From NCBI RefSeq assembly GCF_001194135.2, contig NC_068987.1, positions 103,109,187 to 103,148,533 on the forward strand: a stretch of DNA of 39,347 nt, read 5' to 3'. This DNA comes from Octopus bimaculoides. Taxonomy: Eukaryota. The notes beneath the pieces are model-generated. The model saw only the letters and a list, made by a program, of their open reading frames with translations. It did no database searches and was not told where the DNA came from. The position numbers were made by a program, and so were the translations under genes. Every line of letters begins with the position of its first letter. Positions within the stretch are counted from its first letter, which is position 1. This document shows, piece by piece, positions 9,795 through 38,054 of this stretch.

Positions 9795-9915
9795 AGAAAG
9801 AGTAATCGACAGAAAGAGTAATCGACAGAAAGAGTAATCGACAGAAAGAGTAATCGACAGAAAGAGTAATCGACAGAAAGAGTAATCGACAGAAAGAGTA
9901 ATCGACAGAAAGAGT
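9795..9915. repeat. Perfect 16-bp minisatellite (AGAAAGAGTAATCGAC) x7.5
   Basis: Seven identical units plus 9 nt, read directly. Confidence 0.98.
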
Positions 9916-15746: not shown

Positions 15747-16428
15747 TTTCTTTTATTAGCCACACAGGGCTGCACGGAGAGGGGACAAATACAACTGTAG
15801 AGCTTTTCTTTAAAAAAGAAAAAAAAATCCGATCAAAACGGNNNNNNNNNNNNNNNNNNNNNNNNNNNNNNNNNNNNNNNNNNNNNNNNNNNNNNNNNNN
15901 NNNNNNNNNNNNNNNNNNNNNNNNNNNNNNNNNNNNNNNNNNNNNNNNNNNNNNNNNNNNNNNNNNNNNNNNNNNNNNNNNNNNNNNNNNNNNNNNNNNN
16001 NNNNNNNNNNNNNNNNNNNNNNNNNNNNNNNNNNNNNNNNNNNNNAAGTTTTCGTCTATAATCCTTTCGCTCGGGTCCACCACACACATTCTTTCACCAT
16101 GGCCACCAGTATGATGAACACTGCCTTGCCTTCCCTGTTGAGGGACGGTGGTGGAGCAAATTGCACAATAGACTCGGCTGACAGGCGGACTCGTCCCACA
16201 CGTGACAGCAGCCGTTCGGCATAAACCCACAGGTCGGAAATCTTTGGACACTGCACGATTGCGTGCAGAACAGTTTCGTCGCTCTGACCGCATCTCGGTC
16301 AGGTCGGTCCGGTGTGTCTCGAACCGTGCCTGTAAAGCTTATCCCGAACGAGTAATGCTTCTCGATAGCACTGCCAGGCCAGGGATCTCTGGTGGTTGTC
16401 CATAGGTCCCGGCCCGAAAGTTGTCCTG
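15747..16428 (-). mobile_element. L1/Tx1-clade LINE 3' portion (ORF2 C-terminal CCHC region plus 3' UTR), spanning an N-gap
   Basis: 16428->16046 translates as RTTFGPGPMDNHQRSLAWQCYREALLVRDKLYRHG..*PRCGQSDETVLHAIVQCPKISDLW..VFIILVAMVKECVWWTR (zf-RVT-like C-x2-C-x8-H-x4-C with the first Cys mutated). The 3' terminus ends CTGTGTGGCTAATAAAAG. Confidence 0.85.
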
Positions 16429-25867: not shown

Positions 25868-26225
25868 TTTTTTACTCGTTTACTTGTTTCAGTCATTTGA
25901 CTGCGGCCATGCTGGAGCACCGCCTTTATAGTCTAAAAAATCGCCCCCAGAGGTTATACTTTGTAAGCCTAGTACTTATTCTATCGATATCTTTTGCCTA
26001 ACTGCTACGTTACGGGGAGGCAAACACACCAGCATTGGTTGTCAAGCGATGCTAGGGGGACAAACAGNNNNNNNNNNAGTTTCCGTCTACCAAATTCACT
26101 CACAAGGCTTTGGTCGGCCCAAGGCTATAGTAGAGGACACTTGCCCAAAGTGTCACGCAGTGGGACTGAACCCGGGACCATGTGGCTGGTAAGCACGCTA
26201 CTTATCACACACCCACTCCTACGCC
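25868..26225 (-). mobile_element. SINE family A, full length (10-N gap at its internal microsatellite)
   Basis: Tail GACTGCGGCCATGCTGGAGCACCGCC through head GGGACTGAACCCGG..CACTCCTACGCC on the plus strand. Confidence 0.9.
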
Positions 26226-28008: not shown

Positions 28009-28067
<59 letters not shown>

Positions 28068-28207
28068 AAGAAGAAGAAGAAGAAGAAGAAGAAGAAGAAG
28101 AAGAAGAAGAAGAAGAAGAAGAAGAAGAAGAAGAAGAAGAAGAAGAAGAAGAAGAAGAAGAAGAAGAAGAAGAAGAAGAAGAAGAAGAAGAAGAAGAAGA
28201 AGAAGAA
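28009..28207. repeat. (AAT)n(AAG)n compound microsatellite
   Basis: Read directly: about 10 AAT units then about 56 AAG units. Confidence 0.98.
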
Positions 28208-29749: not shown

Positions 29750-30127
29750 AATGCAACTCCCCAATAGTGGGGGAGACGCCCAAGGGAAAACCGTCCAAGC
29801 CCCACAGAAAATCACGGTTTCCCTGACCCCTTAAGCAATTGCCTTCCTCTCCCGCTTATTCCACTCGGAAGCGCATGTTCAGAGTAGGCCCGTTCACAGG
29901 AACTATGCTCACCACTCTCTTTCACCTTTGCTAGAAGGGAGTACCTCCCTCTCCACTTTGATCTGCCTCTGAAAAAGTTGATCGGAGAGTAACCAGAGAG
30001 GAATGTTCCTGTTTTCAGCTCTTTCAGTTTTGTCCACCACACAACCTCTTTCGCCATGGCCACCAGGCAGATGAAAACCGCCCGGCCTTCCCGACCAAAG
30101 AATGAGAACGCAGCAATCTTGACAATA
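29750..30127 (-). mobile_element. L1/Tx1-clade LINE fragment (ORF2 extreme C-terminus plus part of the UTR)
   Basis: IVKIAAFSFFGREGRAVFICLVAMAKEVVWWTKLKELKTGTFLSG.. is clearly homologous to LNREGKAVFIILVAMVKECVWWTR at 16056-16150. Confidence 0.85.
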
Positions 30128-34192: not shown

Positions 34193-34679
34193 TGTGTGCG
34201 TGTGTGTGTATGTGTGCGTTAGTGTGTGTGTGTGTGTGTGTGTGTGGTGTGTAAAGAGAATCTCGTCAATTTTTCTGAGAGTTTCTAACTTCTGTTCTAA
34301 GTTTTCTTCCTACTTTATATATTTCTGTGGCCTTTGTGTGTATGAACATAAACCGGGCTTAGTGTTTACACACACACACACACATGCACACACACACGCA
34401 CACACACACATACACGCACACAAACACACACACACACTCACACACATACACACACAAACACATGCATACATGCACGCACACTTGCATGCGCATGCACGCA
34501 CTCACACATAGCATTGAAACGGATTTCGTGATTGGATTACGTCTGTGTGTGTGGCGTGTGTGCGTACAGCGTTATAATCGTGGTGGTGNNNNNNNNNNNN
34601 NNNNNNNNNNNNNNNNNNNNNNNNNNNNNNNNNNNNNNNNNNNNNNNNNNNNNNNNNNNNNNNNNNNNNNNNNNNNNNN

Positions 34680-34702
34680 GTGGTGGTGGTGGTGGAGATG
34701 CT

Positions 34703-34745
<43 letters not shown>

Positions 34746-34930
34746 ATGTGATGATGATGATGATGATGATGATGACGACGATTATTATGAAGATGATGAT
34801 GTGATGATGATGATGATGATGATGATGATGACAATGATGATGACGATGATGATGACAACGTCGATGACGACGACATCGACGACCACGACGTCGACGACCA
34901 CGACGACGTCGACGACGACGAGACGACGAA
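34680..34930. repeat. Compound trinucleotide repeats (GGT)(GCT)(GAT)(GAC)
   Basis: Read directly. Confidence 0.95.
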
Positions 34931-35402
34931 GATAGTTAAGCTTTTGGTTAATTGTAATGAAGTGTCGAATATAAACATGAGTAGCAACGGAAAACAAGAA
35001 CCAAAAACAATTTCAATAATATGATCGTTAATTAACTGCAACACTCCCTTGTGTCTTAAGGGGATTGTTTTGTTAGGAGAAGGAAGTTCTATATTTCTAA
35101 AACAAACAACACATGATAAACAATTCATATATTTTCCGTTAACGTATGAAATATAGAGAAGATGTTAGCTTTCATACTCGGGTGCATGAGGAAGGGATGG
35201 TGCAAATGGGATTGGATGAAGAGAAATTTCAAAGATAAGATTTGGCCAAACAAATCAAAGCCTTTCTTTCTTTCTTTTTTTCTTTCATCAATCTTTCTTT
35301 TCTGTATTTGTATTTTTGCGTTTTTTTGTTGTTCTTTTTTTTGTGCTATTATCTATTCTTCGTTTTATCTTCCGTCATTAGAATGATGATCACCATTATC
35401 AT

Positions 35403-35541
35403 CTTATTCTTTGTAAGCTTAGTACTTATTGTATCGTTCCCGTTTGCCGAACCGCTAAGTTACGGGTACGTAAACACACCAGCATCGGTTGTCAAGCGAT
35501 GTTGAGGGGACAAACACAGACACACAAACACACAAACACAC
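35403..35541 (-). mobile_element. SINE family A, 3' half of a split copy
   Basis: CTTATTCTTTGTAAGCTTAGTACTTATT..GTTGTCAAGCGATG..GGACAAACACAGACACACAAAC. Confidence 0.85.
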
Positions 35542-36242
35542 AAATCTGGTAATTAATCATATATTAATTAATATCGATTAATTATCAGGAGGCCAGCACA
35601 TCTAAAGAAGAGATTCACAAATAGTATCTGCAATCTCAGGGGATTAAGGTACATTTTAAAAAAATAACGTTGACCACTAACGTGGACAATTAATGTGCTA
35701 GAAATAGATCACATCTTGCGTCTATTAAGACCTAAATTGTTCTCAACATCGAATATAGCAGCATACCAAAACGTGAGCGGGCAAGACATTTAAAATCACA
35801 TAAAAAAGCATTCTTAAACAGGTACCGGTTTCGGATTTAACAATCTTACCGATTGTCCATTCCTCTTCAGCCTGATTTGTAATGTAACCGCAATCATCAG
35901 AATCGTATACAGTGTTGCCCACCGCCATGGGTGCGCGTGTATATGGTTCTGCTAATTACAGCTTAATGGTAAAATTCAAAAGTCTTCTTTTTGGCGCGCT
36001 AATTCCAGGAATATATCTGCAGAAAAATATTTACTGCGTCGTATATATTCAGTATGAGAAAATGGGTAATGAGTAAAATATTATTATAAAATCTGGTAAT
36101 TAATCATATATTAATTAATATCGATTAATTATCAGGAGGCCAGCACATCTAAAGAATCAAAGCGATTCACAAATAGTATCTGCAATCTCAGGGGATTAAG
36201 GTACATTTTAAAAAGATAACGTTGACCACTAACGTGGACAAT
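35542..36242 (-). mobile_element. Hammerhead-containing non-autonomous element with terminal direct repeats (retrozyme-like or PLE-like)
   Basis: Direct repeats at 35542-35690 and 36089-36242 differ only by a 5-bp indel and 2 substitutions. Period is 547 bp. There is an internal HHR and no recognisable coding capacity. Confidence 0.8.
35819..35874 (-). ncRNA. Minimal type-I hammerhead ribozyme
   Basis: Minus strand: CAGG-CUGAAGA-GGAAUGGACAAUC(GGUAA)GAUUGUUAAAUCC-GAAA-C-CG-GUA-CCUG. All core nucleotides are present, stem I is CAGG/CCUG, stem II pairs at 11 of 13 positions, and helix III is the palindromic ACCGGU. Confidence 0.9.
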
Positions 36243-36371
36243 ACGACGGGCTTCTTTCAGTTTCCGTCTACCAAATCCATTCACAAGGCTTTGGTCAGCC
36301 CGGGGCTATAATAGAAGACACTTGCCCAAAGTGCCACGCAGTGAGACTGAACCCGCAACCATGTGGTTGGT
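36243..36371 (-). mobile_element. SINE family A, 5' half of a split copy
   Basis: ACGACGGGCTTCTTTCAGTTTCCGTCTACC..GACACTTGCCCAAAGTGCCACGCAGTGAGACTGAACCC; continues the 35403-35541 half. Confidence 0.88.
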
Positions 36372-36809
36372 ATTGAAATGTGCTAGATATTAACATTTTT
36401 ATTCACCCTTCTTTATCTGAAAATTAAATCGATTTAATAAATAAATTGAACATTCCCTAAAGTTTGTCAGATTATATTCCGTAGGAGTAGGTTTCATCTT
36501 TCACAACTTGTTTCCTCTGGCGTAAGTAAGTACGAGGTTTCTTTTATTTTATGATATTTGGAATTCCCTGTTATATGAGCGCAGGGCCTAGATGCCTTAC
36601 CTTATATAAGTTGCCTAATTTACGGGAAGTACATATACATTTGTCCGCTATTCCTTTTTTTTTTTCTTTTTCTACTTTATCACCAAGAATTATGGAACTT
36701 TTAATTTCCTTTTATTCCTTCACGATGTTTGTGGCCAAAAGTCACGCACCAAAACATGTAACATTTTATTTATAATTAGTTTTAATTATTATTATTGTCA
36801 CTATCATTA

Positions 36810-36965
36810 CTAAGGCTTGAGCTGGCAAAATCGTTAGCACGCCGGGGAAAATGCTTTCCTTTCAGGTTCGATAAAATGAGTACCAGTATTACACTGGGCC
36901 GATGTAATCGACTTACACCCTCCCCGAACTTTCTGGCCTTGTGCCAAATTATGAAATTATTATTA
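36810..36965 (+). mobile_element. SINE family B with an internal deletion removing the B-box
   Basis: GAGCTGGCAAAATCGTTAGCACGCCGGGGAAAATGCT joined directly to TTCCTTTCAGGTTCGATAAAATGAGTACCAG. Confidence 0.8.
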
Positions 36966-37430
36966 GGCAGTTTTTTGATCGTGTAGAAATATATGTGTAT
37001 TCATTGCCATTTTTACTTAGTTCATTCAATTAGAGAAAAATTGAAGTATGTCTTTGACAATTCCGGATCGTATTGAACATGCATGTCTTTGGGCCACCAT
37101 GTATTTCCTGGTCGTTTTTTTTTAATGTATTGTGTCTTGCAAAAACTTTCAAACGTGAAAGATGATAATTAGTTTTTCGTATACTCAAATACAACATACT
37201 GCCTTTTCGTCTTATTTTTAGGTATGGTGTACTCTTGTCTGCAGAAGTCAATGACTCCATTTCTTGAGATTCTAAAGTGAGAAGCGAGAGGAAATTTTGT
37301 TACTATTTCTAGCACGCCGAACGGGAAACCTCATTGCTGAACTCGTCCTTTCTATTGTGTTTATTCCAAAGGCATTGTTTTATTACTCGTGTTTTGTACG
37401 CTGGATGCTGCTACATGTTAGCAGAGTTGG

Positions 37431-37433
<3 letters not shown>

Positions 37434-37498
<65 letters not shown>

Positions 37499-37511
37499 TG
37501 ATAGATAGATA
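37434..37511. repeat. (GATA)n
   Basis: Read directly. Confidence 0.97.
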
Positions 37512-37589: not shown

Positions 37590-38054
37590 NNNNNNNNNNN
37601 NNNNNNNNNNNNNNNNNNNNNNNNNNNNNNNNNNNNNNNNNNNNNNNNNNNNNNNNNNNNNNNNNNNNNNNNNNNNNNNNNNNNNNNNNNNNNNNNNNNN
37701 NNNNNNNNNNNNNNNNNNNNNNNNNNNNNNNNNNNNNNNNNNNNNNNNNNNNNNNNNNNNNNNNNNNNNNNNNNNNNNNNNNNNNNNNNNNNNNNNNNNN
37801 NNNNNNNNNNNNNNNNNNNNNNNNNNNNNNNNNNNNNNNNNNNNNNNNNNNNNNNNNNNNNNNNNNNNNNNNNNNNNNNNNNNNNNNNNNNNNNNNNNNN
37901 NNNNNNNNNNNNNNNNNNNNNNNNNNNNNNNNNNNNNNNNNNNNNNNNNNNNNNNNNNNNNNNNNNNNNNNNNNNNNNNNNNNNNNNNNNNNNNNNNNNN
38001 NNNNNNNNNNNNNNNNNNNNNNNNNNNNNNNNNNNNNNNNNNNNNNNNNNNNCG

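What the first reader, a model, noticed from the sequence alone, without database searches (positions are those of the whole stretch)
35542..36242. Retrozyme-like element: 1.3 copies of a 547-bp unit carrying a canonical hammerhead ribozyme, inserted into a SINE microsatellite
Seen: two near-identical direct repeats (149 and 154 bp) flank ~400 bp of non-coding DNA. The whole unit splits a family A SINE at its internal (CA/TA)n tract, and the halves on either side rejoin in register. The minus strand carries an HHR with an intact core. Known: small non-coding retroelements with minimal type-I HHRs (metazoan non-LTR retrozymes, Penelope-like pseudo-LTRs) self-cleave, and retrozymes give rise to circular RNAs. 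Inference: a greater-than-unit-length insertion with terminal redundancy is what reverse transcription of a circular or tandem RNA would leave. This may be an undescribed cephalopod retrozyme or non-autonomous PLE family mobilised in trans. The near-identical repeats suggest a young insertion.
Basis: partly seen in the sequence, partly recalled or inferred. Interest (0 to 1): 0.88.

Follow-up and report, generated by a model that had tools for sequence, protein, structure and literature searches.

The report
Hammerhead-bearing Penelope-type retroelement copy in SINE
A 701-bp non-coding insertion with overlapping ends and one minimal hammerhead-ribozyme motif sits in the microsatellite of a SINE; it looks like an ordinary, probably inert, copy of a Penelope-type or retrozyme-like retroelement, a kind already known in molluscs and other animals.

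Summary
Two direct repeats (35542-35690, 149 bp; 36089-36242, 154 bp) differ by 2 substitutions and one 5-bp indel. They flank 398 bp with no coding signal. The 701-bp block splits a SINE at its (CA)n/(TA)n tract, and the joined flanks align colinearly with four other SINE copies.

The minus strand carries a hammerhead-like motif (35880-35813) with an intact core. It is minimal, not canonical: 31-nt helix II, 1-bp helix III capped by a palindromic CCGG loop, 4+2-bp helix I. Rfam reports no hammerhead, even at E<=10. My descriptor finds it as the only hit in the window; 6 of 1000 shuffled windows gave any hit.

The motif lies between the repeats, so the locus has a single ribozyme. Ribozymes of this architecture work as dimers, so this locus probably cannot make a unit-length or circular RNA by itself.

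Best reading: a non-coding element mobilised by Penelope-like (PLE) machinery, inserted at an AT-rich microsatellite as a partial tandem.

I could not test copy number, tandem arrays, circular RNA, or whether this is just the end of an autonomous PLE. No collection available here holds cephalopod DNA, as two control searches showed. Verdict: new member of a known kind, modest interest.

The parts
35542..35690 (-). Direct repeat R (149 bp). In ribozyme (minus-strand) sense this is the 3'-terminal part of the insertion.
   Evidence: the repeat finder families D3 and D5; self-BLAST; pairwise alignment A2.
35691..36088 (-). Internal 398-bp non-coding segment. It carries the single hammerhead-like motif.
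   Evidence: No ORF above 70 codons in any frame; no Pfam hit at E<=1; no protein homologue.
36089..36242 (-). Direct repeat R' (154 bp). It differs from R by 2 substitutions and a 5-bp indel. In minus-strand sense it is the upstream, 5'-truncated partial copy (pseudo-LTR-like).
35813..35880 (-). Minimal type-I hammerhead-like motif. Helix I 5' strand 35880-35871; core CUGAAGA 35870-35864; helix II 35863-35833 (G10.1-C11.1, 11 of 13 positions paired, loop GGUAA); GAAA 35832-35829; loop CCGG 35828-35825; U16.1-A17 35824-35823; predicted cleavage between 35823 and 35822; helix I 3' strand 35822-35813.
   Evidence: My descriptor scans; the MFE fold contains helix II and helix I. No Rfam hammerhead match.
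35546..35589 (-). 44-nt AT-rich hairpin, 4 nt from the 3' end of the minus-sense element (second copy at 36093-36136). It may be a recognition or initiation structure for the reverse transcriptase; this is inferred.
   Evidence: Inverted self-match of 86% over 44 nt; RNA fold -12.4 kcal/mol, z = -2.9.
35404..35541 (-). Host SINE, the half that ends in the (CA)n tract. This is the target, not part of the element.
   Evidence: BLAST to other copies in the window, 78-88% identity; alignment A1.
36243..36373 (-). Host SINE, the half that begins ACGACGGGC (tRNA-related head side). This is the target, not part of the element.
   Evidence: BLAST to four other copies, 79-91% identity; alignment A1.

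Best explanation
The 701-bp block is one retrotransposed copy of a short, non-coding RNA element that bears a hammerhead. It is a non-autonomous derivative of Penelope-like elements, equivalent to an animal 'non-LTR retrozyme'.

Proposed mechanism; every step is inferred except the anatomy:
1. The element RNA has minus-strand sense.
2. A PLE reverse transcriptase / GIY-YIG endonuclease supplied in trans nicks the AT-rich (TA)n part of the SINE microsatellite.
3. Reverse transcription starts near the terminal AU-rich hairpin (35589-35546).
4. The enzyme copies more than one period, either because the template was a multimeric transcript or circle, or because it jumped to a second template.
5. 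Synthesis stops at 36242. This leaves about 150 bp of terminal redundancy, a pseudo-LTR.

In master copies the minimal hammerhead would pair with a second copy through the ACCGGU palindrome and cut multimeric RNA after UA (35823|35822). This locus has only one ribozyme, so it is most likely an inert daughter copy. Under a borrowed rate, the 1.3% difference between the repeats suggests an age of a few million years at most, younger than its host SINE.
For: Shown here:
- Overlapping ends, 398 bp of non-coding DNA between them, and an insertion flush with both SINE halves at the (CA)n/(TA)n tract.
- A hammerhead-like motif with all core positions, a G10.1-C11.1 pair, a long helix II, a 4+2-bp helix I and a 1-bp helix III with a palindromic tetraloop.
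- That motif is the only descriptor hit in the window. Shuffles gave 6 of 1000 for the window and 0 of 3000 for the element.
- No ORF starts in or after the ribozyme, and all frames close within 18 codons of the 3' end. There is no Pfam or protein homology.
- Folded as a circle, the 547-nt period is more structured than its shuffles: -129 kcal/mol, z = -3.4.

From papers:
- PLE and amphibian hammerheads have exactly this architecture and act as dimers (PMC4209133, PMC7229834).
- PLEs insert as partial tandems, at AT-rich or microsatellite targets (PMC8557442, PMC11167929).
- Retrozymes are 51-972 bp, are often found as monomers, and are related to PLE pseudo-LTRs (bioRxiv 10.64898/2026.07.22.740005).
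- Penelope elements were recently active in Octopus vulgaris (PMC13282606).
Against: - Rfam's covariance models do not recognise the motif at any threshold tried.
- My descriptor limits were fixed after I had seen the hit.
- No homologous copy could be retrieved, so there is no covariation, no copy number and no proof of a family.
- The ribozyme is not in the repeated part, unlike typical PLE pseudo-LTRs.
- In a two-copy cofold, a competing palindrome (AAACCGGUACCUGUUU) forms the intermolecular helix instead of the catalytic helix III.
- The 547-bp period may be an accident of two truncated copies lying head to tail.
- No target-site duplication is recognisable.
Confidence: 0.45

Rival explanations
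1. It is simply the terminus (pseudo-LTR / untranslated region) of an already known autonomous Penelope-type element. Two independently 5'-truncated copies (547 bp and 154 bp) were joined head to tail in one insertion event, which is the usual PLE partial tandem. There would be no separate 547-bp family and no circular RNA.
For: - PLE insertions show frequent 5' truncation and partial tandems in all variants (PMC8557442).
- Most single minimal hammerheads in Schistosoma were attributed to truncated PLEs (PMC4209133).
- Penelope families are numerous and recently active in Octopus (PMC13282606).
- From this locus alone, the 547-bp period cannot be told apart from a chance truncation point.
Against: - No coding remnant of RT or endonuclease, and no ORF start near or after the ribozyme. 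In the one PLE studied biochemically, the ORF starts inside the hammerhead and reverse transcription starts 111-118 nt into the ORF (PMC11167929).
- That arrangement may not hold for other PLE clades, so this point is weak.
Confidence: 0.3
2. It is a non-PLE insertion, for example a short element mobilised by a microsatellite-targeting LINE (Dong/R4-type elements are abundant in octopus), or another unclassified repeat. The hammerhead-like motif would then be fortuitous.
For: - There is no Rfam hammerhead hit.
- Dong-R4 LINEs are the most active LINE group in O. vulgaris (PMC13282606).
- From my own knowledge, several LINE lineages target microsatellites.
- No family evidence is available for the motif.
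Against: - Descriptor hits are rare by chance, about 0.006 per shuffled window.
- The motif shows features that are not required by the core but are typical of PLE hammerheads: G10.1-C11.1, a palindromic loop 3 and a long helix II (PMC4209133).
- There is no poly(A) or simple-repeat tail at either end.
Confidence: 0.12
3. The terminal redundancy is secondary. It could be a rearrangement after insertion, a collapsed longer tandem array, or a short-read assembly or gap-closure artefact.
For: - The window is a gapped draft with 12 runs of N, mostly at repeats.
- PLE tandems are known to cause problems in short-read assemblies (PMC8557442).
Against: - There is no gap within 35000-37500 apart from 34589-34679 and 37590-38052.
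- The two repeats are not identical (2 substitutions plus a 5-bp indel) and are separated by 398 bp of unique sequence.
- Both outer ends are flush with the SINE halves. A simple overlap artefact or a local duplication does not predict that.
Confidence: 0.08
4. It is a miniature LTR retrotransposon (TRIM or plant-type LTR retrozyme), or a rolling-circle DNA transposon (Helitron).
For: It has two direct terminal repeats around a short non-coding core.
Against: - The repeats lack TG...CA ends.
- There is no primer-binding site after R and no polypurine tract before R'.
- There is no 4-6-bp target duplication.
- There is no 5'-TC / CTRR-3' Helitron end with an A^T target.
- There are no terminal inverted repeats.
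Confidence: 0.03

Closest known systems
Metazoan non-LTR retrozymes (Cervera & de la Pena 2020, PMC7229834; bioRxiv 10.64898/2026.07.22.740005)
   Same: Short, AT-rich, non-coding unit with a type-I hammerhead. The apparent period of 547 bp lies inside the reported 51-972 bp range. Head-to-tail redundancy is present, monomeric and partial daughter copies are common, and the kind is already described in a mollusc (mussel).
   Different: Here there are only about 1.3 periods and one ribozyme, whereas retrozymes are defined on tandem arrays with a ribozyme in each unit. The unit is longer than the 170-400 nt typical of invertebrates. Circular RNA and family membership were not shown.
Minimal hammerheads of Penelope-like elements and amphibian satellite repeats (PMC4209133, PMC7229834)
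   Same: [quoted passage not shown] Together these imply action as a dimer.
   Different: Helix II is much longer (31 nt with two mismatches, against 6-8 bp). There is no unpaired nucleotide between A9 and 10.1. The motif lies outside the repeated (pseudo-LTR-like) part. It is not recognised by the Rfam hammerhead models.
Autonomous Penelope-like elements with pseudo-LTRs (Penelope/Poseidon, Neptune; Naiad for microsatellite targeting; PMC8557442, PMC11167929)
   Same: Partial-tandem insertion that gives direct terminal repeats; an AT-rich / (TA)n-(CA)n microsatellite target; 5' truncation.
   Different: There is no RT or GIY-YIG coding sequence at all. Naiads, the clade with the documented (TA)n preference in Octopus, lack canonical hammerheads, so this element does not fit that clade.
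Non-autonomous Chlamys PLE derivatives such as MRC1 of Chlamydomonas (PMC8557442)
   Same: Short non-coding elements that form pseudo-LTRs and head-to-tail multicopy insertions, often at (CA)n.
   Different: Those are from green algae, have no hammerhead, and share demonstrated 3'-end similarity with an autonomous partner. No partner was identified here.

Membership tests
Hammerhead ribozyme (type I, minimal) | Conserved core C3-U4-G5-A6-N7-G8-A9 and G12-A13-A14 | tested here: met
   CUGAAGA at 35870-35864 and GAAA at 35832-35829 on the minus strand.
Hammerhead ribozyme (type I, minimal) | A15.1-U16.1 pair and a non-G nucleotide at position 17 (the cleavage site) | tested here: met
   A(35829)...U(35824)-A(35823); predicted cut at 35823|35822.
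Hammerhead ribozyme (type I, minimal) | Three helices around the core | tested here: inconclusive
   Helix II is good (11 of 13 positions paired). Helix I has 4+2 bp. Helix III has only 1 bp plus a CCGG loop, which is acceptable for dimer-type minimal hammerheads (PMC4209133) but not for a canonical monomer.
Hammerhead ribozyme (type I, minimal) | Match to the curated covariance models (Rfam hammerhead families) | tested here: not met
   No hammerhead match at gathering score or at E<=10, even on 111 nt.
Hammerhead ribozyme (type I, minimal) | Covariation in homologues, and self-cleavage | not testable with these tools
   No homologous copy could be retrieved. This needs a bench assay.
Metazoan non-LTR retrozyme | Tandem array of two or more units, each with a hammerhead | tested here: not met
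   About 1.28 periods and a single motif; none lies in the repeats. Monomeric daughter copies of retrozyme families do exist (bioRxiv 10.64898/2026.07.22.740005).
Metazoan non-LTR retrozyme | Non-coding, low GC, a unit of a few hundred bp, and no LTR/PBS/PPT | tested here: met
   No ORF or homology; GC 35% and a 547-bp period; no PBS or PPT seen by inspection.
Metazoan non-LTR retrozyme | Multicopy family expressed as circular RNA | not testable with these tools
   No cephalopod genome or transcriptome is in the collections. The SINE controls came back negative.
Penelope-like element (autonomous) | ORF encoding RT and a GIY-YIG endonuclease | tested here: not met
   No ORF above 70 codons; no Pfam hit; no protein homologue. 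None elsewhere in the window either.
Penelope-like element (autonomous) | Pseudo-LTRs from partial tandem insertion, with the hammerhead inside the pseudo-LTR | tested here: inconclusive
   Direct terminal repeats are present, but the hammerhead motif lies 116 bp outside the repeat.
Penelope-like element (autonomous) | AT-rich or microsatellite target | tested here: met
   The insertion sits where other SINE copies carry (TA)n; target preference from PMC8557442 and PMC11167929.
LTR retrotransposon / TRIM / plant LTR retrozyme | TG...CA LTR ends, PBS, PPT and a 4-6-bp target duplication | tested here: not met
   Read from the sequence: the repeats run AAATCTGG...GGACAAT, the flanks are CACAC and ACGAC, and no PBS or PPT is present.
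Helitron | 5'-TC...CTRR-3' ends, a 3' hairpin, and insertion between A and T | tested here: not met
   There is no CTRR end on either strand.

The most novel reading that the evidence does not exclude
The locus is a recent daughter copy of an undescribed cephalopod retrozyme family: a roughly 547-nt non-coding RNA with an unusually long helix II hammerhead. That RNA would be processed as a dimer from tandem master loci, circularised, and retrotransposed by octopus Penelope elements into SINE microsatellites.
Probability: 0.3. Interest if true: 0.45.

Novelty: new member of a known kind. Interest (0 to 1): 0.3.

Why it matters
If a family stands behind this copy, retrozyme-like or PLE-dependent non-coding elements would extend to cephalopods. 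I found no paper in the searched library that reports them there. It would also add a hammerhead variant that the current Rfam models miss, which is useful for improving ribozyme and transposon annotation in octopus genomes rich in SINEs and PLEs.

It would not change the current picture. Hammerhead-bearing PLE derivatives, their partial-tandem insertions, their microsatellite or AT-rich targets and their presence in molluscs are all already described.

Tried and rejected
- Rfam cmscan on the whole window, on 1.2 kb and on 111 nt gave no hammerhead or other ribozyme. The only hits were weak and spurious (SCARNA7, DdR8, SAM_alpha, sR7).
- My first pattern search (CTGANGA, gap of 30 or fewer, GAAA) missed the motif because helix II is 31 nt.
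- The CTGATGA at 35909-35903 was rejected. The flanking bases do not pair as helix I or helix II (read).
- I tried to find other copies through proteins. Exact look-up of five ORFs, the 61-aa ORF and a six-frame chimeric query of the whole insertion all returned nothing.
- A SINE control built the same way also returned nothing. These negatives therefore say nothing about copy number.
- Exact look-up of ten larger window ORFs, aimed at fetching an independent assembly, returned nothing.
- A metagenome scan with the hammerhead pattern gave 0 hits. A SINE control pattern gave 3 loci that match only 19-21 nt, which is chance. No octopus DNA is therefore present in that collection.
- A full-text search for the motif sequence gave 0 papers.
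- ARAGORN found no tRNA in the window.
- LTR/TRIM, Helitron and TIR-transposon readings were rejected from the end sequences.
- A 3-bp 'AAT' target duplication was considered. I rejected it as unparsimonious, because the same bases are part of both repeat copies.

Full report
OBSERVATION

The repeat finder and a self-BLAST both show two direct repeats: R at 35542-35690 (149 bp) and R' at 36089-36242 (154 bp). In a pairwise alignment, 147 of 149 aligned bases are identical and there is one 5-bp indel. Similarity stops exactly at 35542 on the left and at 35690/36242 on the right.

Between the repeats lie 398 bp (35691-36088). The whole 701-bp block occurs once in the 39-kb window.

The sequences on either side are two halves of a SINE that has four other copies in the window, at 78-91% identity. 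When joined, the flanks align colinearly with those copies. The break falls where the others carry (CA)n(TA)n, immediately 5' of ACGACGGGC. This copy keeps the (CA)n part but has no (TA)n part.

There is no run of N between 34680 and 37589.

THE RIBOZYME

Rfam gave no hammerhead in three runs: at gathering score on the window, at E<=10 on 35300-36500, and at E<=10 on the 111 nt around the motif.

A descriptor scan of my own found one candidate, on the minus strand at 35880-35813:
- helix I, 5' strand: ACAAAUCAGG
- core: CUGAAGA
- helix II: GGAAUGGACAAUC-GGUAA-GAUUGUUAAAUCC
- GAAA, then CCGG, then UA with cleavage after it
- helix I, 3' strand: CCUGUUUAAG

Every invariant core position is present. 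G10.1 pairs with C11.1, and helix II pairs at 11 of 13 positions. Helix I has 4 pairs, a U-U mismatch, then 2 more pairs. Helix III is the single A15.1:U16.1 pair closed by the palindromic loop CCGG, so ACCGGU can form a 6-bp intermolecular helix.

Under a stricter descriptor this is the only hit on either strand of the window. Dinucleotide-preserving shuffles produced a hit in 0 of 3000 trials for the 701-bp block and in 6 of 1000 trials for the whole window. The descriptor limits were set after I had seen the candidate, so these figures are somewhat optimistic.

The architecture matches what has been published for metazoan hammerheads that act as dimers, in PLEs and in amphibian repeats: short helix I, long helix II, the G10.1-C11.1 pair, and a one-pair helix III with a palindromic tetraloop (PMC4209133, PMC7229834). 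The motif is therefore credible but minimal, not 'canonical'. I attribute the Rfam miss to the 31-nt helix II and the one-pair helix III. That is inference.

Two cautions apply. In a cofold of two copies, an overlapping imperfect palindrome (AAACCGGUACCUGUUU) forms the intermolecular helix rather than ACCGGU. And no homologues were available to test covariation.

WHERE THE RIBOZYME SITS

The motif lies in the internal segment, 266 nt from 36088 and 281 nt from 35542. It does not lie in the repeats. The locus therefore has a single hammerhead, of a type that is inactive as a monomer (PMC4209133, PMC7229834).

Releasing a unit-length RNA needs two cuts. This locus is therefore unlikely to be a source of monomeric or circular RNA.

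CODING CAPACITY

- No frame is open for more than 70 codons.
- Ten translated segments gave no Pfam hit at E<=1.
- A chimeric six-frame query found no protein at E<=10.
- No ORF begins in or after the ribozyme. All three minus-strand frames close within 18 codons of the 3' end.

In the one PLE studied biochemically, the ORF starts inside the hammerhead and reverse transcription begins 111-118 nt into the ORF (PMC11167929). That arrangement is absent here.

OTHER ANATOMY

- A 44-nt AU-rich hairpin sits 4 nt from the minus-sense 3' end (-12.4 kcal/mol, z = -2.9).
- Folded as a circle, the 547-nt period gives -129 kcal/mol, z = -3.4 against shuffles, with 64% of bases paired.
- The block lacks TG...CA ends, a primer-binding site, a polypurine tract, Helitron ends, terminal inverted repeats and a recognisable target duplication.

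WHAT IT MOST LIKELY IS

Four published facts bear on this:
- PLEs insert with frequent 5' truncation as partial tandems that create pseudo-LTRs. Their endonuclease prefers AT-rich DNA, and some clades prefer (TA)n or (CA)n (PMC8557442, PMC11167929).
- Non-autonomous PLE derivatives make pseudo-LTRs and head-to-tail copies (PMC8557442).
- Animal retrozymes are now regarded as non-autonomous PLE derivatives related to pseudo-LTRs. Their consensus lengths run 51-972 bp and many occur as monomers (bioRxiv 10.64898/2026.07.22.740005).
- Penelope families were recently active in Octopus vulgaris (PMC13282606).

All features seen here fit a non-coding RNA bearing a hammerhead that PLE machinery reverse-transcribed into the SINE microsatellite. 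I commit to the non-autonomous, retrozyme-like reading at 0.45.

The main rival, at 0.30, is a truncated terminus of an autonomous PLE, with two truncated copies joined head to tail. That would make the 547-bp 'unit' an accident.

A circular template is possible but not needed. Multi-copy linear transcripts are the published PLE template, and hammerhead cleavage was dispensable for insertion in vitro (PMC11167929).

AGE (INFERENCE)

Two substitutions in 149 bp give 1.3%. The O. vulgaris paper equates JC 0.09 with 25 My and JC 0.2 with 56 My (PMC13282606). Using that calibration, and assuming the repeats were identical at insertion, the age is about 2 My with a very wide error. The host SINE copy differs from its relatives by 9-22%, so it is older.

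WHAT COULD NOT BE DONE

None of the collections I could reach holds cephalopod non-coding DNA.
- A protein search with SINE translations found nothing.
- An 18-mer conserved in the SINE hit only three metagenome contigs, each over 19-21 nt, which is chance.

The negative searches for the element therefore carry no information about copy number.

VERDICT

However, the ribozyme is minimal and single, the circular-RNA step is not supported by this locus, and the 'new family' claim is untested. This kind of element is already known in animals, including molluscs. I rate it a new member of a known kind, with interest 0.3.

Noticed in passing
window 16046-16428 (minus strand); also 30032-30092: A GC-rich (55%) island lies between two assembly gaps. 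One of its frames reads PRCGQSDETVLHAIVQCPK..., a C-x2-C...H-x4-C knuckle, and gives a weak Pfam zf-RVT hit (E = 0.038, below cut-off). It is probably the C-terminal end of a LINE ORF2. A related 61-bp piece (82% identity) lies near 30032-30092.
   Followed up: partly
window 35831-35816 (minus strand): A 16-nt imperfect palindrome, AAACCGGTACCTGTTT, overlaps the hammerhead helix III and cleavage site. In a two-copy cofold it forms the intermolecular helix in place of the catalytic ACCGGU pairing. It may act as an alternative dimerisation or regulatory conformation.
   Followed up: partly
window 35546-35589 and 36093-36136: A 44-nt AT-rich hairpin lies at the very end of the element, once in each repeat (RNA fold z = -2.9). 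It may be the initiation or recognition structure for the reverse transcriptase.
   Followed up: partly
window 35520-35541 / 36243: The host SINE copy keeps its (CA)n tract but has no (TA)n tract, which the other copies carry before TACGACGGGC. The insertion either replaced that tract or was accompanied by a small target deletion.
   Followed up: partly
window 13871-38052 (12 runs of N); for example 26068-26077: The window is a gapped draft. Most gaps abut microsatellites, and one 10-N gap sits exactly in the microsatellite of another SINE copy (25954-26191). Repeat structures here should be checked against long reads.
   Followed up: no
window 9795-9915; 28038-28207; 34680-34930: Three simple-repeat features stand out: a perfect 16-bp repeat of 7.6 copies (AGAAAGAGTAATCGAC), a perfect (AAG)57 tract, and a long (TGA)n/(GAC)n tract next to a gap about 600 bp upstream of the element.
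   Followed up: no
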